Shown here piece after piece: positions 1-58,850 of a stretch of 64,000 nt of DNA (within the stretch, counting starts at the first letter, position 1; each line of letters starts with the position of its first letter). Source of the DNA: Octopus sinensis (taxonomy: Eukaryota). The translations under genes were made by a program, and so were the position numbers. The stretch is taken from contig NC_043015.1 of NCBI RefSeq assembly GCF_006345805.1, positions 38,130,001 through 38,194,000 of the forward strand, read 5' to 3'. Below the pieces are notes generated by a model. It had not been told where the DNA came from. It did not search any database and saw nothing but the letters and a program-made list of their open reading frames with translations.

Positions 1-319
1 TTCCATTCCCCAACAACTCCCTCTCTAACCCCTCCCCATTCGTTATGATATCATTAAACTCTTATACACACGTGCTGCGAGCACAAACATCTGTTGAAAA
101 ACCCACTCCGATCTACCCATACACTTCAATCCCCACCCCCAGTTCCCAGCTGTACACCCACTCTCTCACTTTTTCTCTCACTGTACACGGGTGTGTATGT
201 ATTTGGGTAGTTAGGTATGTATGTATGTATGTAGGTATGAAGGTAGTTAGGTGTGTAGGTATGCGTGTGTATACGTACGTATGTATGCATGTATGTGAGC
301 ATATATACATTTGTACACA

Positions 320-478
320 GGCGCAGGAGTGGCTATGTGGTAAGATGTTTCCTTCCCAGCCACATGGCTTTGGGTTCATTCCCCAGCATGGCAACTTGGG
401 CAAGTGTCTTCTAGTTTAGCCTTGGGCCAACTAAGCCCTCTGAGCGGATTTTGTAGACGGAAACTTGAAAGAACGTCG
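320..478 (+). mobile_element. tRNA-derived SINE, 5' head and central part (family A: head - microsatellite - tail)
   Basis: GGCGCAGGAGTGGCTATGTGG A-box-like start and GGGTTCATTCCC B-box-like motif, then TTGGGCAAGTGTCTT and GTAGACGGAAAC. The same body recurs at ~27620-27800 (-), 35960-36010 and 53100-53140. Confidence 0.75.
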
Positions 479-488
479 TGTGTGTGTG

Positions 489-578
<90 letters not shown>
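479..578. repeat. (GT)n/(CTGT)n/(CTAT)n compound microsatellite
   Basis: Direct reading. Confidence 0.95.
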
Positions 579-579
<1 letters not shown>

Positions 580-830
580 CTCTTTTATTCTTTTACTTGT
601 TTCAGACATTTGACTGTGGCCATACTGAAGCACCGCCTTTTAGTCGAAGAAATCGACCACAAGACTTAATTTTTAAGCCAAGTATTTATTCTGTCACCTT
701 CTTTTGTCGAATCGGTGAGTTACGGGGCCGAGGACGCACCAAAACTAGTTGTCAAGCTGTGTGGTGGTGGTGGTGGTGGTGGTGGTGGTGGTGGTGTGGG
801 GACACATACAAACAAAGACACACTCGCACA
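580..830 (-). mobile_element. SINE family A, 3' tail
   Basis: Reverse complement of the tail seen on + at 36170-36350 (GGCGGTGCTCCAGCATGGCCGCAGT..ATGACTGA..AGTAAAAGAATAAAAGA). Confidence 0.75.
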
Positions 831-869
831 CACCACTCTTCCACACACACATATGTACGTACATACATA

Positions 870-969
870 NNNNNNNNNNNNNNNNNNNNNNNNNNNNNNN
901 NNNNNNNNNNNNNNNNNNNNNNNNNNNNNNNNNNNNNNNNNNNNNNNNNNNNNNNNNNNNNNNNNNNNN
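870..969. other. Assembly gap (100 N, true size unknown)
   Basis: Run of exactly 100 N. Confidence 0.99.
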
Positions 970-1887
970 ACCCATATCACCTGTTTGTGCCGTTCTGGTG
1001 CTGTCTTTCAATGTCGGTGACCTTGACGTTTCACACTGCGGTAAGCGACTCTGCGTTTCTGTTGCCGAAACCGAAAATGAAGCAGAACATTTTTTGCGTT
1101 TCCTGTCTTTTTTGGAGGGCGAAGCACCAGGCAAAGCTTGATAACTCTTTGATGCACTACGAGAACAAACCGTCTTTTTAATGTTATCGTCAATTGTATT
1201 CAAACTTTCTGATGGGTTTAGTTCAAGTAATGGTTTTATCAAAGAGTTCCGAGATGGTTGTCTGGAAAGTAACAGCGAGCTTTTTGAGTCCATTTGATAT
1301 TTCTCGATAATTCTCTGATGTAGCTTCCGTTTTTCCATTTGGAATTTTCTGCATCCAGTGATATCTGATCGCAGCTTCATTGTTAATGCCATTGGTAGTT
1401 TAAGGCGGCCAATTGTCCGATCGTGTACACTGCCCAGCTTCCGGTTGCTTTTGTTTCCTATGTCAACGACATTTCGAACTTGGCATTTTGAACGAAGTTT
1501 AGAGATGCTATACGGCTGGCCGACGTAATTAGCTTCAAAAAATAACTTGAACCATCGTCCGAAATAAAAGTTATCCTTGAAAGTCATTCGCATCATATTC
1601 TCCATTGGAATATTTTTGATGATTCCCAGTTCATTGAAAATGCACTGAAGGCATTTGAAATTGTGATATTTATCATAATCAGTCAGGCCTCCAATTCGAA
1701 CTTTTTTTAGCGAAAGTGATCCTGGGAACAGTATTTCCATTCCAAGACAAAGTTCTGTTCCACTTCCAAGCTCACCAATGTCTTTCATTTCTGGGCTAAG
1801 AGTTTCCTGAAGCCAGCTAATCAGAGTTTCTTTGCTAACATTATGTATCCCCTGAGACTGTGTATTCGTGACAACTTGCATCTCCAT
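970..1887 (-). CDS. MAPRE: Divergent EB1/MAPRE-family microtubule end-binding protein: N-terminal CH domain plus basic, Ser-rich tail; 3' end lost in the gap
   Basis: 306 uninterrupted codons. N-terminus aligns by eye to the EB1 CH domain: VSKETLISWLQETL~LSRHDMLAWINESL, ELGSGTELCLGMEILFPGSLSLKKV~[32 protein letters not shown]~QNFKILQ, FKDNFYFGRWFKLFFEANY~FQDNFEFVQWFKKFFDANY. ATG context is AACAAAATG. Sequence beyond the gap is microsatellite and SINE, so the ORF-track extension to 745 is not credited. Confidence 0.88.
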
Positions 1888-1999
1888 TTTGTTAAACTGT
1901 CTCTGCAGTACGACACTTCGAAATAGGACTTTTAAACATATATCGAAATAGTGAACGAAGTCTTTTTTCGAAATTATATATCGCAGGCATGAACTGCCT

Positions 2000-2420
2000 T
2001 TGCAGTGATGTCAAACTGATAGTGACGTCACACTGTGACGACGTCGTCAAAGGAGACCGCTCAGTCTTCATTTGAAGTCGGAAAGTTAATGTCGCATCTT
2101 TAAAACGAATAAATAGACAAGGATTCCACCATAGTGAAATGTTGCGGTCAGTGATGGAAATTCAAACGGTAAATGTCCTTGACAAAGCAAGGCCGTAACT
2201 TCGATTCCCCTTTTAAAATTGCAATCATTCTACGCCTTTTGACTCTCAGACTCTTCAGAAAAGAACAAACGCAGTACAATCTTCTTCACCTTTCGATTTG
2301 TAGAATTTCAATTCGACAATTTGAGAACTTCTGAAAAAATGAGCAGATTTGTTGGTGTACGTTTTACAAAACCCACTGTGCCTACTTTAACATCCGGTTC
2401 AAAACGGAAGTGACGTAGAA
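2000..2420 (-). promoter_or_regulatory. Candidate promoter of the EB1-like gene: CRE cluster and ETS-CRE composite
   Basis: TGATGTCA 2006-2013, perfect GTGACGTCAC 2022-2031, palindrome TGACGACGTCGTCA 2036-2049, CGGAAGTGACGT 2405-2416. Unique, CpG-retaining sequence 120-530 bp upstream of the ATG. Confidence 0.55.
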
Positions 2421-2544
2421 AATGAAGGCGTTTCATCCAACAAATAATGTATAATTATAAGAGCATTGTTTTACACGTGATGACAACAAAAGATAAATTA
2501 AATTGACTTAGTGGCCATTTTATAGAAAATTTTATAAACATAAT

Positions 2545-3083
<539 letters not shown>

Positions 3084-3139
3084 CACGTGTTATTACATAT
3101 AGTGAAAGCTGTTTTCAGTAAAATTGTTGTTGACTATTT

Positions 3140-3570
3140 CCGGTTTAGTTTCGAACTCAGAAATATGAAATATTCTTCCGGAGAAGGTCGCTCTCTTCAT
3201 TTATTTTATAAAGAGGGAAAATTGTAAGTTCTCCTTGTGCACAGGTGTCCAAATGATCACTCCATGGTATGGGTCTAAGTGCGGGATGTTTTATTTGATG
3301 TCTGTGCACATTCACCCGGTTGCTTAATTTCGATTTTGTTTCTCCGATATAATGTTCGTTGCATCGTGGCCATCAGGTTTTTGCTTTTACAGTTCATATT
3401 TACATTCACTTTCAATTCTTTTCCATTCTGGAATTTTTTGGCTGGTCCCTGTCCTATTAAATCACATGTCCCACATCGGAGTCTTCACATTTGGCAACTT
3501 GCATCATTTCTGCCTCTGATGCAAATCTTGCTTTGGTTAGACGTTTCTTAAGATTTGATGGTTGCCTTCG
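3140..3570 (-). mobile_element. Penelope-like element GIY-YIG endonuclease fragment (degenerate)
   Basis: Minus-strand translation KRLTKARF..KCEDS.CGTCDLIGQG, then NEHYIGETKSKLSNRVNVHRHQIKHP..WSDHLDTC..IFPLYK, typical of the PLE endonuclease. Confidence 0.8.
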
Positions 3571-3599
3571 GCTGTTGATTATTTGTTTTTGCTTGCTCA

Positions 3600-5097
3600 C
3601 AAAAAAGAAACCTTTTTTAGGATATACGAACTCAAAACAGACACGGAAGAGAAACCTAAGGATACAGGAAATAGATGGAATTTTGAGACAAATAAAGAGA
3701 AGACCGATATAAAATAAATATTTCAGAAAGAAACCTCAAAGAAAAGGAAGTTAACCTTCTAAAATATGGACTCAAATTTACACCAACCCCGCAACGCAAC
3801 ACCATAGATCTTATTAAAGACTCGGAAGAATTTTGCAGAAAACTCCGCCTTAAAGATTTCTTTCAAAATAAACACAATGAAGATCCATCTATTGTGAAGA
3901 ACCAGATAAGCTTTATACCCCCAGTAAACAAAAACAGATACTTAGAGGAATATATAATGTATCTGAAAATATCTGCAAAACCCAATATCACAATGGACCA
4001 TGCAGAATCAAATATTACGCATGAATAGACAAACTCCATTATAGAGAAATGGTCCTTGAGCACCTGAATAACCAACAATTCTTTAAAAAAAATTAGAAAA
4101 TTATCTAGATAGGTATACATGAAATAAGATTAGTAAACTTACAAAAACATATAAAAATGAACTTACAAAAAAAAAGAGATTACCTTACTAAGTCTGAAGT
4201 AAAAACCAGTAACATGTAAGGTCTTCCAAAAATCCACAAATCTAAAGAAATCAAGGACTGTTTCAAGGACATTCACACTCTCTGTATAAAGATTCCCAGA
4301 CCATCTGATCTTGAATTAAGATCAATTGTAGCAGGACCAGCATCAAGCACACAAAGACCGAGTAACCTATATAAATTGGTCCTTAGTTTTATTAGAGACT
4401 AGCAGCATAGCCCGGCGTTGCCCGGGTATTTAAGAGCCCCTAGTAGGCAACGACTAATCCCAATCTAGTTCTTTCCCTCTAGGGAACGAAGACGCATATG
4501 TAGGTTGCAATGTCTTTTATTCACTCGAATACTTCTGTGTATACGATGTTCCTAGCTGTCTCCCGACAGAAAATGTGTTGCATATAAAAAGCTTAGATTC
4601 TCGACCCCATGTCGAATTTATCGATTTTTTTCAGAACTGGGGGAGCTTTTCAAAATTTTCGCTGCGTTAGTTTTGAATTATGACATTGGACTATGTGTGT
4701 GTTTAGTTTCATCAGAATCGGTTGAAAGCCGTGGTCAGGGTGAGAGTACAACCTGACAGACACACAGACACACAGACAGACAAACTGCCGTTTATATAGA
4801 GAGAGATGATATGGATTTCCTAAACCACATTTCAAAAAGAACGAACAAAGAAACCATATTAGACGGCCTTGATGTAGTCAGTCTCTACACCGATACCCCC
4901 CCCCCATAACCTAGGACGAAAAGCAGTAGAGGTCTGGATACACAAATACTCACAAAGAATCCAAGAAAGATTCTCCAAGGAGTCCATACTTGAATGGCAA
5001 CAGCTAGTACAAGAAAATACCTACTTCTCTTTAGACAACCAATACTACCTACAAATACAGGGGACTGCGATGGGTACCAGGGTAGCACCTACAGCAC
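3600..5097 (+). mobile_element. Penelope-like element reverse transcriptase fragment, interrupted by a Helitron
   Basis: LLKYGLKFTPTPQRN..EFCRKLRLKDFF, *GLPKIHK, LRSIVAGP, SFIR/DDMDFLNH, DVVSLYT, DNQYYLQIQGTAMGTRVAPT. Contains stops and frameshifts. Confidence 0.88.
4399..4806 (-). mobile_element. Non-autonomous Helitron (408 bp)
   Basis: Minus strand starts TC and ends CTAG. Subterminal hairpin CCCGG-GCAACG-CCGGG at 4411-4426. Inserted between A and T with no TSD. Excision restores the PLE reading frame F-I-R-D-D-M-D-F. Confidence 0.9.
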
Positions 5098-5114
5098 TTT
5101 CACCGCACACCTTG

Positions 5115-5415
5115 AAGCCCCCAACAGAACTCGACACCATCTCACAGCTTGAAACAGACACAACTCTGGATTCAGAAAAATATTCCATCGTTCATAGGCG
5201 AGGACATGTGGCCCTCAAGAAGCCCCGATCTCAACCCGTTGGCTCTTTCTCTTTGGTCCATTTTGGAAACGAAGGTCTCGAGCACACTTCATGTTTCGCT
5301 CAACACTCCGAAATGGAAACTGCGCCAAGAATGGGCTTCGATTCCGCAAAAATAGCTGCGTGCCGCAAAGATTCGCACCTAGACTTAGGGTTGTGATTCG
5401 AAACAGTGACGATCA
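5115..5415 (+). mobile_element. Tc1/mariner DD37D (maT-type) transposase C-terminal fragment
   Basis: QQNSTPSH..WIQKNIPSFIGEDMWPSRSPDLNPL(A)LSLWSILETKV..LRQEWASIPQK. There are 37 residues between the positions of the 2nd and 3rd catalytic residues, both mutated. Confidence 0.7.
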
Positions 5416-5994: not shown

Positions 5995-6476
5995 TTTGCC
6001 ATCAAGGAATAAATTGTTATGTTTATTAACGAAAGAATATTACCTTCTGATATTTGTCGTTACATTCATGTAAAACACACATTCGTACATTATTGGAAGC
6101 CTTCTCACACGCACACAATCCAGATACTGCCTAAAGAAATCTGCAGTTACTCTATCCAGACTACAAGTTGAGGTTTATACCTGTAATATTTTGGGCACTG
6201 GGATATGTAACACACTGCCTAAATATCAATCTTGAGAAATTAGGCTTCTCAAAACCAGAAAGGACAAAGCTGATTCGAAGACTACAGATCCAATCCATCC
6301 CTGGAACTTACAGAGATCTGTAAAACTTTCCAGAAGCTTATCATTTAAATATATATGAGCATGTCTAGATATGTAGCTATATGCATGAGAAGACATACAT
6401 TAAAGCATACAAATCTGCACATACACATACATACATACATACATACATACATACATACATAACATACATACATACA

Positions 6477-6508
<32 letters not shown>

Positions 6509-6650
6509 ATACATACAAAAATACCCTGTTGTTGATATTGAAATCCCAATGAGGGAGCATTGCATCTAGGTTAGAAACCGGCTCATTCTCTATTGGTAAG
6601 AAATCTTGAAATGATGACATACTGTGGCAGCCAAACTGAATTGATGACAT
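5995..6650 (+). mobile_element. R4/Dong-type (RLE) LINE 3' end, subfamily B, with 3' UTR containing (CATA)n
   Basis: LYPDYKLRFIPVIFWALGYVTHCLNINLEKLGFSKPERTKLIRRLQIQSI. UTR motif AATCCCAATGAGGGAGC..TTAGAAACCGGCTC..AAGAAATCTTGAAAT recurs at ~11950-12040 and 44560-44670 (-). Confidence 0.7.
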
Positions 6651-6659
6651 ACATGCATA

Positions 6660-6918
6660 ACGTTTATACACGCATACATACACACATACACATACACACA
6701 CACATACATACATACATACACACACACATACACACACACATACATACATACATACATACACACATACACATACACACACACATACATACATACAAACATA
6801 CATACATACATACATACACACACATACATACATACATACATACATACATACATACATACATACATACATACACATACATACATACATACATACATACATA
6901 CATACATACACACATATA

Positions 6919-6951
<33 letters not shown>

Positions 6952-7058
6952 GCATGCATACATACATATATACACACATACATACACACATACATACATA
7001 CACACATACATACATACATACATACATACATACATACATACATACATACATACATACA

Positions 7059-7091
<33 letters not shown>

Positions 7092-7160
7092 GCATGCATA
7101 CATACATATATACACACATACATACATACATACATGCCTGCATTCATACATACATACATA
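6660..7160. repeat. (CATA)n/(CA)n microsatellite
   Basis: Direct reading. Confidence 0.95.
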
Positions 7161-7224
7161 GCCTCATGGTTACATGTACAGTGGTCCACATTCGCTAATA
7201 TCTGCAAAAAAGAAATAACTAACC

Positions 7225-7445
7225 CACTGCGCATGTGCAGCACCTACTCTCAGTAAATAACACTATTCTATGAAGTTGCGCGTGCGCAGTACGTATAACT
7301 AATAACATTATAACATTACTCAGCAAAGTTGCACATGCGTGGAACGTGCTCTAAAATCCATTGACACTATTCTATGAAACTACGCATGTGCGGAGCCTAA
7401 CTCCGAACGAGTAATATTTCTCTGTGAAGACACGCATGCGCAGTC
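7225..7445. repeat. Decayed ~51-bp minisatellite, 5 units, each with a GCGCATGCGC-like core
   Basis: Cores at 7228, 7277, 7330, 7381, 7431 (spacings 49, 53, 51, 50). Shared flank ACACTATTCTATGAA. Confidence 0.75.
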
Positions 7446-13168: not shown

Positions 13169-13584
13169 AGTGTGTGTGTGTCTGCACGTTGGTAAGTGCA
13201 CATGCATTCATACACATATCTGCATACGTGAATGTGTAAATGTGTGTGTATATATATGGAGAGAGAGTATGTGTGTATGTGCCTATATATATACACACGC
13301 ACACTCACGCGCGCGCACACGCACATACATTCATGCACATTCATACATAAATACATACGTGTATACATACATACAAGCATACAATACATACATAATACAT
13401 AAATACATCCATCCATCCATCCTTATATACATACATGCATACATACATACATACATATATACATACATACATACATACACACACACATACATACATACAT
13501 ACATACATACATACATACACACATGATACATACATACATACATACATACATATATGCATACACACACATGCATACATACATACA

Positions 13585-13617
<33 letters not shown>

Positions 13618-13994
13618 GCATACACACACATGCATACATACATACATACATACATACATACATACATACATACACACATGCATACACATACATACATACA
13701 TACATACACACATGCATACATACATACATACATACATACATACACACTTACATACATACCTACATACATATATACATACATACATGCATACATACATACA
13801 CATACATACATACATACATACATACATACATACATACATACATACATACATACATACATACATACGTATATACATACATGAAAGGCTTCCCGAATCTCTC
13901 GGCGATTCTCTTTTATATCCTGTTTCGAACAAAACGTTTTCTAATATTCCTGCGACTCTCCAAGACCAAACCACTTTTGTTCTCAATGTTGTTC

Positions 13995-14180
13995 TTTGGC
14001 AGAATCGTCGGTGCGTCGAACTATATATGCTCGGCACCATTCCATCCGTCTTTACGTTCTGTGTTGAAGTTTCGCCGAGGTCGACTTTGCCTTTCATCGC
14101 TTCGGAGTCGATGAAATAAGTACCGGCTGAACAATCGACCCATGCCTCCCCCCGAAATTGCTGGCCTTGTGCCAAAATGT
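13995..14180 (+). mobile_element. SINE family D (tRNA head plus GCCTTTCATCC..GTCGATAAAATAAGTACC central domain)
   Basis: Same central motif as copies at 16095-16295, 22695-22925, 26885-27113, 30540-30630 (-) and 59805-60020 (-). Confidence 0.7.
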
Positions 14181-41697: not shown

Positions 41698-42069
41698 CTG
41701 AATCTGCTTCACTTCTCAAAATGTTTGCGGGGTTTTAACATCACACCCTGGAGGAATGAGTAAAATGACAGGGGAATATCATAAAATTTATACAAAACTG
41801 TTTGATTAAATAGTCTTCTTTTTCTCTTTTTCTTTCCTCCTTTTTTCTGTTTTTTTCTTTTCGCCTGTTATAAAATTGAAACTTAAAGACTGATGACGTC
41901 ATTGCATCAACGCGTGGACGCTGGTTCTTACTTTACATTTAAATTTCTATAATTTTGAATGTTTATCACTTTTTATTTGCTGTTGAAATATCGTTCAACT
42001 AATAAAATATCTATTACAATCGAATTGCGCTCTTCGTCTTAACTAATAATAACAATAATAATAATGATA

Positions 42070-42104
<35 letters not shown>

Positions 42105-42114
42105 AATAATAATG

Positions 42115-42157
<43 letters not shown>

Positions 42158-42210
42158 TAATAATGATAATAATAACAATAATAATAATGATAATAATAAT
42201 AATAATAATG

Positions 42211-42268
<58 letters not shown>

Positions 42269-42413
42269 TAATAATAACAATAATAATAATGATAATAATA
42301 ATGATAATAATAATAATAATAATAATGATAATAATAATAATAATAATAATATAATAATAATAATAATGATAATAATAACAATAATAATAATGATGATAAT
42401 AATAATAATAATG

Positions 42414-42480
<67 letters not shown>

Positions 42481-42520
42481 AATAATAACAATAATAATAA
42501 TGATAATAATAATAATAATG

Positions 42521-42556
<36 letters not shown>

Positions 42557-42633
42557 TAATAATAATAAATAATAATGATAATAAAACAATAATAATAATG
42601 ATAATAATAATGATAATAATAATAATAATAATG

Positions 42634-42681
<48 letters not shown>

Positions 42682-42771
42682 TAATAATAATAATGATAAT
42701 AAACAATAATAATAATGATAATAATAATAATAATAATGATAATAATAATGATAATAATAATAATAATAATG

Positions 42772-42811
<40 letters not shown>

Positions 42812-42972
42812 TAATAATAACAATAATAATAATGATAATAATAATGATAATAATAATAATAATAATAATGATAATAATAATAATAATATAATAAAATAAT
42901 AATAATGATAATATAACAATAATAATAATAATAATGATAATAATAATAATGATAATAATAATAATAATAATG

Positions 42973-43009
<37 letters not shown>

Positions 43010-43448
43010 TAATAATAATAATAATAATAATAGTAATAATAATAATAATGATAATAATGATACATATTTTATTGGTTGAACGATATTTCGACAGTAAGTC
43101 TGTCTTTGTCGAGTTCAAAGTAAGAAGTGATAAAACATTCAAATTATAGAAATTTAATTGTAAAGTATGAACAAGAGCAACCAGCGTCCACACATTGATG
43201 GAATGACATCATCAGTCTTTAAGATTCAATTTTATAACAGGCGAAAAGAAAAAGACAGAAAATAAGACCGAAAGAAAGAGGAAAGAAAAAAAGAAAAGGA
43301 AAAAAAGAAGAAGAATATTTAATCAAACAGTTTTGTATAAATTTGAGGATATTCTCCTGTCATTCTTATTCCTCCAGGGTGTGATGTTAATAATCCGCAA
43401 ACATATTTCTCCTCCTGCATTTTGAGAAGTGAAAGTGAAGCAGATTCG
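41698..43448. repeat. Diverged inverted repeats (41698-42012 / 43072-43448) enclosing a ~1 kb (AAT)n array
   Basis: Arms align in reverse, e.g. TTATACAAAACTGTTTGATTAAATA and CGCCTGTTATAAAATTGAA. Each arm has a CTGATGA hammerhead remnant. Confidence 0.85.
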
Positions 43449-45398: not shown

Positions 45399-46673
45399 CA
45401 GGAGTTTAGCAAAATAATGGAAACACCTTAAAATTTCAAACAAATTTATATTAATATGGGACAGGACCACCTTTGGCAGTAATTAAAGCTTGAATTCTAT
45501 GAGGTATGGACTCGTACAAAGTTTGAATTGTTTCCAAAGGAATTTTTGTCCATTCTTCAGCTAAAACACTCTCCAGTTCTTGTAGTGATGATAGTGGAAG
45601 ATATCGACTCCTTACTTGTTTTTCTAAAATGTACCATAAATGTTCAATAATATTGAGATCTGGGGACTGTGGTGGCCAGATAAGATGTTCAACTTTACTA
45701 GAATGTTCTTCGTGCCATTCAGTAACAACTTTAGCTGTGTGAATTGGTGCATTATCATCTTGAAAGATTGCGTTTCCCTCTGGAAGCAGTTTCGCAACCA
45801 TAGGATGAATTTGATCAGATAAAATGCTTAAGTAGTCTTGACTATTAATTCTGCCTTGGAGGGAAACGATTGGGCCGGTGGGTTTCCTAGATATAGTCTC
45901 CCAGATCATCACAGATCCTCCTCCATGTTTAACAGTTGGAAGAAGGCAATCTGGGTCAAATGCTTTTTTTTTATTTTGGCTGTCTCCACACGTATACTCA
46001 GCCAGTGGTCGGAAATAAGGTAAAGGCTAACTTGTCCGAGAAAATAATATTCTTCCACTGATCTAGAGACCAATTCTGTAAGTTTTTACTCTAGTCTAAA
46101 CGCTTTGCAATGTTTGTTTTTGAAAGTAGTGGTTTTCTGATTGCACCCCTCCCGTGAAATCCAGCTCTGTGCAGCTCCCAGCGAACAGTTTTTGTGGAAA
46201 TTGGGTTCTCAAGGTGGTCATTAAGGTGGTACAGTAATTTTGGGAGCTGTACTTTTGTGATCTTTTCTAACAATTCACATAAGAAAGTCCCTATCTGAAA
46301 GTTTTGGTTTTCTTCCGGAGTTTTGTTTCGACGAGGACGTTTTTCCCTCTTTCTCAAAGGGTGTCATTACTTTCAAGACAGAACTTCTTGATACACCAAA
46401 CATTTCGGCCGTTTTCGTTACGCTAGCACCTGCCAAACGAGCACCAACAATTTGACCGCTTTGAAAGTCCGATAGATCTGTCATTTTAGTGAATTTTAAT
46501 TCCCTTTTTCTTATGATATCTGAAAAGAGAGAGCAATTTTAGCAAAACATTAAGCAACGCTAATAACAAATTTTAAAAAAACATAAAAATAAACAAGCTT
46601 TTTGATGGTTTTATAGGTATTTCAGAATTATAGGCTGTGATGCTAGGTGTTTCCACTATTTTGTCCCAACCCC

Positions 46674-56055: not shown

Positions 56056-57133
56056 TGGAAACGATATGCTGTACTGCTTGGTATTCGCGCTGGAAGCTTT
56101 AACGCGATCATTTCAGAGTGTTTGAGTGTCAATCTGAAGACAGTGCAGAGGATTCGCAAAGAGTCGGATGACTCTAATGGTGGTTACGAAAGTATGGCAG
56201 CTCGGAGAACTCACTCTAATCGTTCTGATAAAAAGAGAACTTGGTGAGATCCAGGCCGTGATTGACAACGGTCCCTCCAAGTCAATCAGGTCCATCGTCA
56301 GGGACATGGGAGTGTCTAAGATTCCTATCAGGCAGGTAGTGCATGAAGACATTCGGTATTCCTCATGCATGATGAAAAAGGGCCAATTTTTATCCCAAGC
56401 TATCAAGGACAAGGAGAAAGATTGCTCTACGAGGCTTTTGATCAAATTCAAGCATCCCCTCCCCAACCGAACATGCTTTGGGTTTTCTCAGAAAAACCTC
56501 TTCCAGGATCTGATGGTAAATTCACAGAACAACCGTCCCCAAACCATGTACTGAGAGTGACAAAAAACAAACATCCAGTCAACATCATGGTGTTTGGAAT
56601 GGTCACTAGTGATGACTATGTTATGCCTCCATTCATCTTCCCACACGGCCTCACACTTAACACGGATGCTACATCAAGTGCCTGGAGGGGGTAGTGCTGT
56701 CCTGGGGGAAGAGGGTGGCTGGCAACAGGACTCTGCACCATGTCACACAAGCAGGAGAAATTTCTGTCACCACATCACCCCTAACATCTGCCCACCTAAC
56801 TCCCCAGACAGCAACCCCCTTGATTATTATGTATGGGGCGCAGTTGAGCGAGAGACCAACAAAACTCGTTATAACAGCAAAGATGTACTGAAGGCAAGGA
56901 TTATGACAGCATTCACCAACTTAAACAAGGAGATCGTCCAGAAGAATTACAGGGAATTCCGAAGTTGTCTGGAGGCCGTGGTTGAAGCCAATGGCAATTC
57001 TATTGAATAAATTTATTCTTTAGTATTTCGAAATATTCTTATGTAACTTTGGTAAATATATCTGTTAAAATGAGATGTCAGTGTTATTTTCATTTTTGCG
57101 TAATTTAGACGACAATTTATTCACCGCACGCTG
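56050..57133 (+). mobile_element. Tc1/mariner DD37D (maT-type) transposon, 5'-truncated and degenerate
   Basis: KHPVNIMVFGMVTSD..PPFIF, WQQDSAPCHTS..PPNSPDSNPLDYYVWGAVE..LEAVVEANGNSIE. Right terminus GACGACAATTTATTCACCGCACGCTG. Confidence 0.8.
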
Positions 57134-57513: not shown

Positions 57514-57829
57514 TAGATATATAAGTAAATGTAATGCACAAGCAAGTTAGATCAATATATAAGCTATATTAAATACATGAAATGCAAAAAACGTATTTAA
57601 GAATCCATGTAAACATGTCAGATTTACCCAGAATATAGATGATATTGAGAATCAAAGGGGGTGAAGAAAAGTATTACATATCCAACAGCTGTTTCTGGTG
57701 GGGTTGCTTGTCAACAATAATATTTGTAAATTTATTCCGTCACAGGATGAGACGAGCTTCTGTCTTCAGGGAAGAAATCTTACATTTGAGATATTAAAGG
57801 AAAGAAGTTCAAAATTGGAACACACATAC

Positions 57830-58361
57830 ATACATACACACACACATACATACATACATACATACATACATGCATGCATGCATGCATGCATGCATACATA
57901 CATACATACATACATACATTCATGCATGCATGCATACATACATGCATACATGCATGCATGCATACATACATACATACATACATACATACATACATTCATA
58001 CATACATACATACATGCATGCATGCATGCATGCATACATACATACATACATACATACATGCATGCATGCATACATACATACATGCATACATACATACATA
58101 CATACATACATGCATGCATGCATACATACATACATGCATACATGCATGCATGCATGCATACATACATACATACATGCATGCATGCATGCATGCATACATA
58201 CATGCATGCATGCATGCATACATACATACATACATACATACATACATAAATGCATACATACATACATACACACATACATACATACATACATACATACATA
58301 CATCATACATACATACATACATACATACATAAATACATACATACATACATACATACATACA

Positions 58362-58390
<29 letters not shown>
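57830..58390. repeat. (CATA)n/(CATG)n compound microsatellite
   Basis: Direct reading. Confidence 0.95.
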
Positions 58391-58392
<2 letters not shown>

Positions 58393-58850
58393 TCAGCCGA
58401 AAATGTCGATTATATTGAATTTCTGTGGAAGACACCACACGTCATAATCAGCTGCCCAGAAATGTTATCAAGGTGCTACCTCTCTATGCGACATGACTTT
58501 GTCGCAAAAGCAATATACAATGCCTTCCAAAAAAGACTGCCCTGAAATAAATATTGAGAATCCCCCTGTTACTGAATACATACACAAACATCAACTCAAG
58601 AAATACTGTTGGAATATTCCCATGAAAACATCTGTCAAGTGTAAACATGACAGGCCAGTTATTGTTGTTTGGGACAGACAAGAAAAAGTATGTACAGTCA
58701 TAGAGTTCAGCTGTCTGGCTGATGTGAATGACTCTTTGAAAATCAAAGAGAAAGAAAATAACTAAGGACAGCTGCTTCTAAAACCTCCAGCTTCTATATC
58801 CGGATTATAAATTCATATTTATACCAATAATAATAGATGTACTAATTTGA
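58390..58850 (+). mobile_element. R4/Dong subfamily B fragment (knuckle plus RLE)
   Basis: WNIPMKTSVKCKHDRPVIVVWDRQEKVCTVIEFSCLADVN..KEKENN. The 5' junction is at (CATA)n. Confidence 0.75.

What the first reader, a model, noticed from the sequence alone, without database searches (positions are those of the whole stretch)
970..1887. Intronless, divergent EB1-like gene with a CH domain but no visible EBH domain
Seen: 306 open codons with a clear but heavily substituted EB1 CH domain, followed by ~170 aa of basic, Ser-rich sequence including KKDRKRKK. No EBH motif (LEKERDFYFxKLR) appears before the gap. Established: EB1 proteins need the EBH coiled coil to dimerise and recruit SxIP partners, and vertebrate MAPRE CH regions are split by introns. 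Inference: a retrocopy-derived, lineage-specific paralogue that may bind microtubules without acting as an adaptor, possibly germline-restricted like divergent EB1 paralogues in flies. The EBH could lie in the gap or in a downstream exon, since the readable sequence ends ..ATG GGT, a possible donor.
Basis: partly seen in the sequence, partly recalled or inferred. Interest (0 to 1): 0.7.

Follow-up and report, generated by a model that had tools for sequence, protein, structure and literature searches.

The report
Octopus intronless EB1-like gene without EBH
This is a real, selectively maintained, single-exon octopus gene that keeps the microtubule-binding head of EB1 but has replaced its partner-recruiting tail with a basic, disordered one, and it belongs to a previously undescribed family of such genes known so far only from octopods.

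Summary
Window 970..1887 (minus strand) holds 306 open codons of an Octopus vulgaris gene. It has an EB-type CH domain (E=4e-26 to human EB1; predicted fold rmsd 1.8 Å) and no EBH.

A gap-free assembly shows that the 100-N gap hides only the last 63 codons. The complete gene is one uninterrupted 369-codon ORF, with no intron at "ATG GGT" and no EBH anywhere (custom HMM -0.5 bits).

It is not a pseudogene. The ORF is intact in three octopod species. dN/dS is 0.3 overall and 0.06-0.12 in the CH domain, and 165 bp of promoter are nearly invariant.

It is not a lone retrocopy either. It belongs to a strongly supported (100/100) clade of at least five or six dispersed EB-like subfamilies with different C-termini. 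All nine members checked have a single-exon ORF. Named members come only from Octopus and Argonauta.

The residue that makes EBs prefer growing microtubule tips (human Q102 = Mal3 Q89) is Lys here. The C-terminal region is strongly basic (+23) rather than acidic. My inference is a microtubule-lattice-binding, non-adaptor protein, possibly nuclear and CDK-regulated.

Expression and the canonical parent gene were not testable here.

The parts
970..1887 (-). Visible part of the CDS: codons 1-306 of a 369-codon single-exon gene (O. vulgaris 'MAPRE1-like', P0001)
   Evidence: ORF list. 100% match to P0001. Uninterrupted 1110-nt ORF in GCA_951406725.2. 0 of 918 nt differ.
1885..1887 (-). Start codon
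   Evidence: First ATG after an in-frame stop. Same start in all three orthologues.
1489..1848 (-). EB-type calponin-homology (CH) domain, residues ~14-133
   Evidence: phmmer vs PDB EB1/EB3, 4e-26. AF2 pLDDT 70-90. Foldseek TM 0.78-0.89, rmsd 1.8 Å to EB1/EB3/Bim1/Mal3, other CH classes E>0.3. dN/dS 0.06-0.12.
1576..1578 (-). Codon AAG = Lys104, the position of human EB1 Q102 / Mal3 Q89 (tip-versus-lattice determinant)
   Evidence: Column is Q in 96% of 53 other EBs and K/R/M here and in the sister group. Offsets to the Mal3 chain place it at residue 89/90. Literature: PMC4821873, PMC10199041, PMC5042579.
1288..1350 (-). Predicted short basic helix, residues 180-200 (RKFQMEKRKLHQRIIEKYQMD)
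   Evidence: AF2 helix, pLDDT about 70. dN/dS 0.3. Weak heptad character.
970..1482 (-). Basic, Ser/Thr-rich, predicted disordered region (residues 136-306 visible; continues to 316 in the gap)
   Evidence: pI 10.4, 36 K+R, 40 S+T. AF2 pLDDT about 30. dN/dS 0.57-0.65 for residues 201-313.
1090..1122 (-). S-P-S-K (full CDK consensus) directly followed by the NLS-like basic cluster KKDRKRKK (residues 256-266)
   Evidence: Read from the sequence. S/T-P-x-K plus the basic cluster is conserved in all three orthologues.
870..969 (.). 100-N assembly gap hiding codons 307-369, the stop and the 3' UTR. The hidden part includes the conserved amphipathic tail helix (residues 317-343).
   Evidence: L001 10919-11110 continues the ORF. 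Window 1..869 does not map within 10 kb downstream in L001. Tail helix AF2 pLDDT about 86. The 30-residue tail block (314-343) has 0-2 amino-acid differences between orthologue pairs.
1888..2052 (-). Conserved promoter-proximal block: TATATAA (1974-1980), CRE palindrome TGACGTCA (2023-2030), palindrome GACGACGTCGTC (2037-2048)
   Evidence: Three-species alignment is nearly invariant over about 165 bp upstream of the ATG. That it acts as a promoter is inferred.

Best explanation
This is a functional, single-exon, octopod-lineage paralogue of the EB (RP/EB, MAPRE) family. It belongs to an old radiation of dispersed intronless EB-like genes that share a remodelled CH domain and carry different C-terminal modules.

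Shown: the protein is an EB-type CH domain, followed by about 180 residues of basic, Ser/Thr-rich disorder with a conserved S/T-P-x-K site next to a KKxRKRKK cluster. A 27-residue conserved amphipathic helix and a short basic end complete it. It has no EBH domain, no long coiled coil and no acidic EEY tail. It is under purifying selection.

Inferred mechanism: the CH domain still docks on microtubules, because the fold, the hydrophobic core and Lys89 are kept. The protein should bind along the microtubule lattice rather than track growing tips, for two reasons. The nucleotide-sensing Gln (human Q102, Mal3 Q89) is Lys, which is a natural version of the Q-to-R lattice-binding mutant. The lattice-repelling acidic C-terminus is replaced by a +23 basic region. 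Without an EBH it cannot dimerise in the EB manner or recruit SxIP or CAP-Gly partners, so it would act as a MAP and not as a +TIP hub.

More speculative: the basic cluster is an NLS gated by the adjacent CDK-type site, as in plant EB1c, giving access to spindle microtubules in division. The tail helix would mediate self-association or partner binding.
For: Identity: EB-type CH at E=4e-26; fold match TM 0.78-0.89.

Full gene: one 1110-nt ORF. The same read-through ORF is intact in O. bimaculoides (371 aa) and in a third octopod.

No EBH: Pfam; custom HMM of 59 EBH regions with filters off, -0.5 bits; hhalign of the tail vs EBH, Prob 0.4%, no better than 27 of 150 shuffles. In an exhaustive phmmer search of 1.84 billion representatives, only residues ~10-140 matched the nearest relatives, and no listed match reached past residue 206.

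Selection: omega 0.29-0.31 overall and 0.06-0.12 in the CH domain in three pairwise comparisons; Fisher p=1.6e-8 and 2.6e-10. Conserved promoter block.

Family: clade support 100/100, subfamily 99/97. Nine members have a single-exon ORF (the third octopod's ORF is uninterrupted in L002). They lie on different scaffolds with no tandem copy. Named members come only from Octopus and Argonauta.

Mechanism: Q102 to K, K100 to T, E106 to Y, I90 to N, N25 to Q and Y44 to L, while K89 and the core are kept. C-terminal net charge is +23 against -3 to -32 in most canonical EBs in the table.

Literature: Mal3 Q89R/A and the analogous EB2 Q-to-R mutant gain lattice binding (PMC4821873, PMC10199041). The acidic C-terminus gives tip specificity, and neutral or basic replacements give lattice binding (PMC3154886). 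I90, K100, F105 and E106 set nucleotide-state preference (PMC6398475).
Against: No expression, localisation or binding data could be obtained. The Logan contigs are genomic-looking unitigs.

Several microtubule-interface residues are changed non-conservatively. K100, whose change to Glu together with Q102E impairs binding (PMC5042579), is Thr here, so microtubule binding itself could be weakened or lost.

Position 104 is not fixed among orthologues: K in two species, M in the third, R in the sister group.

A monomeric CH plus linker binds weakly in mammalian EBs (PMC3154886), and whether the tail helix oligomerises is unknown.

RefSeq models in O. bimaculoides splice out the conserved tail, so the dominant isoform is uncertain.

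The canonical octopus EB1 (presumed parent) was not retrieved, so retroposition is inferred only from the absence of introns.
Confidence: 0.6

Rival explanations
1. It is a processed pseudogene or dead retrocopy of EB1: an open frame kept by chance, with no function.
For: Intronless, heavily substituted CH domain, lost EBH, repeat-rich and gene-poor surroundings.
Against: The ORF is intact over 369-371 codons in three species. dN/dS is 0.29-0.31 overall and 0.06-0.12 in the CH domain, p=2.6e-10. A 30-residue tail block and 165 bp of promoter are nearly invariant. A sister subfamily is retained in two further species.
Confidence: 0.03
2. It is an ordinary EB1 orthologue whose EBH exon is hidden in the gap or lies downstream (an assembly artefact).
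For: The ORF runs into a gap. O. bimaculoides RefSeq isoforms do splice to downstream exons.
Against: A gap-free assembly gives a stop after 63 more codons with no EBH. The downstream exons of the O. bimaculoides isoforms carry no EBH (Pfam; sequence of X1). The CH domain sits in a 100/100 clade apart from all canonical EBs. Other EB-like genes exist in the same genomes.
Confidence: 0.02
3. It is still a plus-end tracker that works as a tissue-specific partner of EB1, like Drosophila EB-SUN, reaching tips by itself or by associating with EB1.
For: Isolated EB CH domains can recognise tips autonomously (PMC6023887 introduction). K89 and the fold are conserved. EB-SUN, a divergent paralogue, tracks tips (PMC11419005).
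Against: No EBH or coiled coil for heterodimerising with EB1. The Gln whose mutation abolishes tip preference is replaced (PMC4821873). A basic rather than acidic C-terminus predicts lattice binding (PMC3154886).
Confidence: 0.15
4. The CH domain has been repurposed and no longer binds microtubules. It might serve as a protein-protein or nucleic-acid-associated module in a nuclear basic protein.
For: Clade-wide replacement of residues that are near-invariant in EBs and lie at the microtubule interface (N25, Y44, K100, Q102, E106, Q109). NLS-like cluster and very basic disordered region. K100E/Q102E impairs binding in EB1 (PMC5042579).
Against: K89, K59/K60 and the whole core are retained, and the CH is the most constrained part of the gene. 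Q to K/R increases rather than abolishes microtubule affinity in Mal3 and EB2 (PMC4821873). A basic linker adds microtubule affinity (PMC3154886, PMC10199041).
Confidence: 0.2

Closest known systems
Canonical EB1/EB3 (MAPRE1/3; Mal3, Bim1)
   Same: Same CH-domain fold and core residues, including Lys89. About 36-39% identity over the CH domain.
   Different: No coiled coil or EBH, no FYF pocket, no EEY tail. Q102K, K100T, E106Y, N25Q and Y44L. C-terminal region +23 instead of acidic. Single exon. Separated by a long, 100/100-supported branch.
Drosophila divergent EB paralogues: EB-SUN/CG18190 (ovary), CG32371 and CG2955 (testis) (PMC11419005)
   Same: Lineage-specific, divergent EB paralogues beside a ubiquitous EB1.
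   Different: EB-SUN keeps an EB homology domain and a short coiled coil and tracks plus ends. The octopus gene has neither domain and has lost the tip-sensing Gln. The two expansions are not related (no arthropod sequence falls in the cephalopod clade).
Arabidopsis EB1c (PMC4700127)
   Same: An EB whose C-terminus is basic and carries a nuclear localisation sequence instead of the acidic tail. It is nuclear in interphase and acts on mitotic microtubules. This is the closest functional analogy for the KKDRKRKK cluster.
   Different: According to my own knowledge (not tested here), EB1c keeps the coiled coil and EBH. It arose independently, in plants.
Plasmodium EB1 and the Mal3 Q89R/A and EB2 Q-to-R mutants (PMC10199041, PMC4821873)
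   Same: EB CH domains that decorate the microtubule lattice instead of tips. In Plasmodium the linker contributes to binding. In the mutants the cause is replacement of the same Gln that is Lys here.
   Different: Plasmodium EB1 keeps the Gln and the coiled coil. The mutants are engineered. Here the substitution is natural and shared by most of a gene family.

Membership tests
EB / RP-EB / MAPRE family | N-terminal EB-type calponin-homology domain | tested here: met
   phmmer 4e-26 to human EB1. Foldseek TM 0.78-0.89 and rmsd 1.8 Å to EB1/EB3/Bim1/Mal3, while other CH classes give E>0.3.
EB / RP-EB / MAPRE family | C-terminal coiled coil plus EB-homology (EBH) domain (Pfam PF03271; FYF-x-KLR-x-IE) | tested here: not met
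   No Pfam EB1 hit at E<=1 on the partial or full protein. Custom 59-sequence EBH HMM with --max gives -0.5 bits. hhalign Prob 0.4%, within shuffles.
EB / RP-EB / MAPRE family | Acidic C-terminal region ending in an EEY/F motif | tested here: not met
   The protein ends ...CRVKKKYA. The region after the CH domain has net charge +23 and pI 10.1, against -3 to -32 in most canonical EBs in the table.
EB / RP-EB / MAPRE family | Near-invariant microtubule and nucleotide-state contact residues (human N25, Y44, K89, K/R100, Q102, E106, Q109) | tested here: not met
   Only K89 is kept. The others are Q, L, T, K, Y and R at the corresponding positions.
EB / RP-EB / MAPRE family | Autonomous tracking of growing microtubule plus ends | not testable with these tools
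   Needs TIRF reconstitution or live imaging.
Cephalopod divergent EB-like CH family (defined here) | CH domain falls in the clade marked by ISP / ELGTGxDFCLG / NFYFGxWF, apart from all other EBs | tested here: met
   22 CH domains form a clade at UFBoot/SH-aLRT 100/100. This gene's subfamily has 99/97.
Cephalopod divergent EB-like CH family (defined here) | Single-exon coding sequence | tested here: met
   Gene range equals CDS length for P0001, P0004, P0007, P0009, P0011, P0023 and P0008. The read-through ORF is also uninterrupted in O. bimaculoides and in the third octopod (L002).
Retrogene (processed copy of an intron-bearing parent) | Intronless copy while the parent has introns | tested here: inconclusive
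   The intronless state is shown. The canonical octopus EB1 was not retrieved (one search returned only arthropods in its top 120), so its intron structure was not examined. That animal EB1 genes have introns in the CH region is general knowledge.
Retrogene (processed copy of an intron-bearing parent) | Poly(A) remnant and target-site duplications | tested here: inconclusive
   No A-tract follows the stop. A (GA)n microsatellite and an AATAAA 140 nt downstream are seen. At this age such marks would not be expected to survive.
Pfam CH (PF00307) | Score at or above the gathering threshold (26 bits) | tested here: not met
   18.9 bits, E=0.0018. The generic CH model is a poor detector here; direct comparison with EB structures is decisive.

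The most novel reading that the evidence does not exclude
Octopods, and probably coleoid cephalopods more widely, carry an undescribed radiation of at least six intronless, dispersed EB-like genes that reuse one remodelled CH domain with swapped C-terminal modules: tandem CH, short or very long coiled coils, a degenerate EBH, or a basic disordered tail. Within it, the tip-sensing Gln survives only where an EBH-like domain survives. This gene's subfamily would be a natural 'lattice-binding mutant' EB. It would be a nuclear, CDK-gated microtubule-lattice protein with no +TIP hub function, perhaps serving division or germline-specific microtubule arrays.
Probability: 0.35. Interest if true: 0.65.

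Novelty: new variant of a known kind. Interest (0 to 1): 0.5.

Why it matters
EB proteins are the master adaptors of growing microtubule ends, and their architecture (CH, coiled coil, EBH, EEY) is almost invariant across eukaryotes. A selectively maintained family that keeps only the CH head is a natural experiment on what the EB CH domain can do by itself. This family also changes the very residues that mutagenesis has tied to tip-versus-lattice choice, and it attaches new tails.

The family offers ready-made variants for testing the Q102 and acidic-tail models of tip recognition. It also adds a cytoskeletal gene-family expansion to the short list of cephalopod-specific genomic novelties.

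On the practical side, automatic names such as 'MAPRE1-like', 'MAPRE3 isoform X2' and 'interaptin-like' hide the family and imply functions (SxIP recruitment) that this gene almost certainly lacks.

Tried and rejected
1. Looked for the EBH or the conserved tail beyond the gap. Window 1..869 carries neither and matches L001 only through microsatellites, so it does not lie within 10 kb downstream in the other assembly.
2. Tested whether the conserved tail helix is a relic of the EBH. hhalign gives Prob 0.4% and score 9.9, against shuffles of 8.3 +/- 1.8, with 27 of 150 at least as high. Rejected as unproven.
3. Tried to retrieve the canonical octopus EB1 with a canonical insect query. All 120 listed hits were arthropods. 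The family-profile search listed no canonical cephalopod EB1 either. The parent gene and its introns therefore remain unexamined.
4. Hoped the four Logan contigs were transcripts. They are collinear with the genome and end in (AT)n and (GA)n microsatellites, so they look like genomic unitigs and say nothing about expression.
5. Searched 10 kb downstream in O. vulgaris for the alternative 3' exon of O. bimaculoides isoform X2. No credible match.
6. An SxIP-like SRLP at residue 280 is not conserved in the orthologues (SRSP, NRSP) and was dismissed.
7. Literature searches for a cephalopod EB family or octopus MAPRE found no description.
8. No second EB-like copy lies in the 64-kb window or in the +/-10-kb flanks of four relatives, so there is no tandem array.

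Full report
**1. The observation**

The ORF is on the minus strand. It starts at ATG 1887..1885 and stays open for 306 codons to position 970, where it meets a run of 100 N at 870..969. Residues ~11-138 match the solved CH domains of human EB1 and EB3 at E=4e-26 to 2e-25, and those of yeast Bim1 and Mal3 at 2e-12 to 7e-10. The generic Pfam CH model reaches only 18.9 bits, below its 26-bit threshold, and no EB1/EBH model is hit even at E<=1.

An AlphaFold2 model gives a confident CH fold (pLDDT 70-90). It superposes on EB1, EB3, Bim1 and Mal3 at TM 0.78-0.89 and rmsd about 1.8 Å, while plastin, parvin and other CH classes score E>0.3.

After the CH domain come about 180 residues with pI 10.4, 36 K+R and 40 S+T, including KKDRKRKK at residues 259-266.

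**2. What the gap hides**

[quoted passage not shown] In assembly GCA_951406725.2 its gene spans exactly 1110 nt, which is 369 codons plus a stop, so it is one uninterrupted ORF. The 918 nt visible in the window are identical to it.

The gap therefore hides 63 codons, the stop and the 3' UTR. 'ATG GGT' is Met305-Gly306, not a splice donor.

The window matches this locus collinearly up to the gap (5198..970, 97.8% identity). The piece beyond the gap (1..869) does not map within 10 kb downstream, so the gap is a join of unknown size.

The hidden tail reads MTPAQKGTPSSNNVIFSQTLLSALEQVSKVLNTIVKFSGIDYENLDANKANTQPVCRVKKKYA.

**3. No EBH anywhere**

- Pfam finds no EB1 domain in the full-length protein or its orthologues.
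- An HMM I built from 59 canonical EBH regions, run with all filters off, scores the protein at -0.5 bits. The same HMM detects degenerate EBH-like domains in other family members (P0011 50 bits, P0023 27, P0013 23, P0004/P0005 7-10).
- A profile-profile comparison of the tail with the EBH gives probability 0.4%. Its score was matched or beaten by 27 of 150 column shuffles.
- In an exhaustive phmmer search of 1.84 billion cluster representatives, hits outside the protein's own cluster matched through the CH region. The nearest relatives matched residues ~10-140, and no listed match reached past residue 206.

**4. The gene is functional**

The same read-through ORF is intact in O. bimaculoides (371 codons) and in a third octopod known only from sequencing runs SRR11869384-94 (371 codons).

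| Region (residues) | dN/dS across the three pairwise comparisons |
|---|---|
| Whole gene | 0.29-0.31 |
| CH domain (1-135) | 0.06-0.12 |
| 136-179 | 0.12-0.23 |
| Helix 180-200 | about 0.3 |
| 201-313 | 0.57-0.65 |
| Last 26 residues (344-369) | about 0.7-1.3 |

The excess of synonymous change is significant (Fisher p=1.6e-8 for the CH domain, 2.6e-10 for the whole gene).

The 30-residue tail block 314-343 is close to invariant: identical between O. vulgaris and the third octopod from Ser315 onward, and 0-2 amino-acid differences between any pair. AlphaFold predicts it as a helix (317-343, pLDDT about 86). It has a clean heptad pattern, with a/d positions 88% hydrophobic against 32% elsewhere.

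The 165 bp upstream of the ATG are almost invariant across the three species. They contain TATATAA at -93, a perfect CRE palindrome TGACGTCA at -143 and a 12-nt palindrome GACGACGTCGTC. That they form the promoter is my inference.

**5. Splicing**

The O. bimaculoides RefSeq models for this gene (LOC106880377) both leave the ORF after '...AQK'. Isoform X1 (385 aa) and isoform X2 (328 aa) join exons about 7.7 and 5.5 kb downstream. Those exons encode unconserved peptides with no EBH.

The read-through tail is conserved at the protein level in all three species. I therefore take the single-exon protein as the conserved product, and the spliced forms as alternative or minor. Only RNA data can settle this.

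**6. A family, not a lone retrocopy**

The nearest relatives are other octopod proteins carrying automatic names such as 'MAPRE1-like' or 'interaptin-like', or listed as uncharacterised.

A careful maximum-likelihood tree of 50 CH domains places 22 cephalopod CH domains in one clade (ultrafast bootstrap/SH-aLRT 100/100). A long branch separates it from vertebrate, arthropod, nematode, flatworm and unlabelled EBs (quick tree).

The subfamilies differ in their C-termini:
- this gene's group (CH, basic disorder, helix);
- tandem double-CH proteins;
- CH plus a short coiled coil (about 310 aa);
- CH plus a very long coiled coil (695-761 aa);
- CH plus coiled coil plus a degenerate EBH;
- at least one further group known only from unlabelled data.

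This gene and its two orthologues (100/99) are sister to P0006/P0007 (99/97). That pair of subfamilies is in turn sister, with moderate support (93/77), to the EBH-like subfamily.

Nine members have a single-exon ORF. For seven of them the called gene range equals the CDS length. For O. bimaculoides and the third octopod the read-through ORF is uninterrupted. The members lie on different chromosomes or scaffolds, and no second copy lies in the window or in +/-10-kb flanks.

All members that carry an organism name are from Octopus vulgaris, O. sinensis, O. bimaculoides or Argonauta hians.

One unnamed ENA assembly (ERZ21867824) carries intronless counterparts of three subfamilies. Each sits on a much longer branch than the Octopus-Argonauta split. 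The radiation therefore predates the split of that unidentified species from octopods.

An intronless, dispersed family fits an ancient retroposed founder followed by further duplication or retroposition. I could not retrieve the canonical octopus EB1 to compare intron positions, so the retro-origin remains an inference.

**7. How it probably works**

Of the CH positions at least 85% conserved in 53 other EBs, the hydrophobic core and Lys89 are kept. These positions are replaced, mostly across the whole clade:
- N25 to Q
- Y44 to L
- I90 to N
- K100 to T
- Q102 to K
- E106 to Y
- Q109 to R

The alignment offsets to Mal3 place Lys104 of this protein at Mal3 residue 89/90, in the conserved F-Q-D-N motif. 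The literature bears on these positions as follows:
- Mal3 Q89R/Q89A raise lattice affinity, and the analogous Q-to-R mutant of human EB2 decorates spindle microtubules (PMC4821873).
- Q89A shifts Mal3 from tips to the whole lattice, and the Gln is conserved in EB1 proteins of all eukaryotes (PMC10199041).
- EB1 K100E/Q102E impairs microtubule binding (PMC5042579).
- I90, K100, F105 and E106 set the nucleotide-state preference that distinguishes EB1/EB3 from EB2 (PMC6398475).

Separately, the acidic C-terminal domain of EBs repels the lattice and so gives tip specificity. Neutral or basic replacements cause lattice decoration, and a monomeric CH plus linker binds weakly (PMC3154886).

In my table, most canonical EBs have a C-terminal net charge of -3 to -32. 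This gene's subfamily alone is strongly basic (+15 to +23, pI 9.5-10.2). Within the cephalopod clade, the Gln survives only in the four members that still have an EBH-like domain. This may reflect a single shared event rather than repeated coupling.

Putting this together, I infer a lattice-binding, non-adaptor microtubule-associated protein. Three things support it:
- The tip-sensing residue is already in the 'lattice' state.
- The repelling tail is replaced by an attracting one.
- The partner-recruiting module is gone.

A full CDK consensus site (S/T-P-x-K) directly abuts the basic cluster in all three orthologues. By analogy with plant EB1c, whose basic C-terminus carries a nuclear localisation sequence (PMC4700127), the cluster may be a phospho-regulated NLS. 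EB2's linker is also phosphorylated by CDK1 and Aurora B (PMC4821873), so it may instead be a microtubule-affinity switch. This last step is speculative.

**8. Rivals**

- Pseudogene: excluded by selection.
- Hidden EBH: excluded by the gap-free assembly.
- A tip-tracker in the manner of EB-SUN (PMC11419005): possible but disfavoured by the missing dimerisation module and the replaced Gln.
- A CH domain that no longer binds microtubules: the most serious rival, because K100 and other interface residues are changed. Only a binding assay can decide.

**9. Comparison with what is known, and novelty**

The gene meets one defining feature of the EB family (the CH domain) and fails three (EBH, acidic EEY tail, invariant contact residues). 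It is best called an EB-like CH-domain protein rather than an EB.

Lineage-specific divergent EB paralogues are known in flies. A basic, NLS-bearing EB is known in plants. A lattice-binding EB is known in Plasmodium. I found no paper describing the cephalopod family. The combination seen here is intronless and EBH-less, with a natural substitution of the tip-sensing Gln and a basic tail, and I found no description of it in what I read. I rate it a new variant of a known kind.

**10. Limits**

No expression data, no binding data and no canonical parent gene were available. The species behind the unlabelled sequences are unknown. The family census is incomplete, because the word-indexed search missed several members that the exhaustive search had found.

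Noticed in passing
window 1888-2052 (minus strand, upstream of the ATG): About 165 bp directly upstream of the start codon are nearly invariant across three octopod species. They hold TATATAA (1974-1980), a perfect CRE palindrome TGACGTCA (2023-2030) and the palindrome GACGACGTCGTC (2037-2048). This looks like a compact CRE/TATA promoter. CRE-driven compact promoters are typical of post-meiotic testis genes in mammals, but that is only an analogy.
   Followed up: partly
L010 10942-10951, 16397-16450, 18594-18806 (O. bimaculoides); equivalent donor at L001 ~10936: Both RefSeq isoforms of the O. bimaculoides orthologue (LOC106880377) splice from an internal AAG|GTAC donor to unconserved downstream exons. 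This removes the conserved tail helix, although the read-through ORF is intact in that genome. It may be alternative 3' processing or a model artefact.
   Followed up: partly
P0006 and P0007 (sister subfamily; L007 10001-10978): The sister subfamily ends in ...IEYYDQF / ...IEYYDEF, an acidic-aromatic C-terminus reminiscent of the EEY/F motif that CAP-Gly domains bind. It also has G[FL]Y[HQ]K[IV] after its helix, faintly like FYFxKL. The Octopus orthologues have lost both features.
   Followed up: no
family-wide (table): Within the cephalopod clade, the Gln equivalent to human Q102 is retained only in the four members that keep an EBH-like domain (P0011, P0297, P0013, P0023). All 18 other CH domains in the clade table have K, R, M, L or S. 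All four are in one subfamily, so this may be a single event.
   Followed up: partly
window 1-869 versus L001: The sequence beyond the gap does not occur within 10 kb downstream of the gene in the gap-free assembly; only microsatellite matches are found. The 100-N gap is therefore a scaffold join of unknown size or a misjoin, not a small sequencing hole.
   Followed up: partly
window 45451-45912 (minus strand): A 153-aa ORF is a fragment of a Tc1/mariner-type transposase (Pfam DDE_3, E=1.5e-14). The ORF at 56594-57010 reads like a similar transposase C-terminus but gave no Pfam hit.
   Followed up: yes
window 475-580, 2540-3080, 6345-7250, 13330-14120, 42000-43200, 57700-58440: Very dense microsatellites ((GATA)n, (GACA)n, (TGTA/TGCA)n) and an extremely AT-rich block (GC 0.20 at 42-44 kb). 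These generate most of the long spurious ORFs. No other credible protein-coding gene was seen in the 64 kb.
   Followed up: partly
P0054 (O. vulgaris, 299 aa) versus P0297 (312 aa): The O. vulgaris model of the EBH-like subfamily has an unrelated N-terminus and stops just before the EBH-like motif that its near-identical relative P0297 carries. It is probably a mis-modelled or truncated annotation.
   Followed up: no
literature: PMC6962438, Hox-cluster figure legend: The giant squid (Architeuthis dux) Hox cluster is reported to contain an interposed gene annotated MAPRE1. This might be a dispersed member of this family in a decapodiform, which would make the family coleoid-wide.
   Followed up: no
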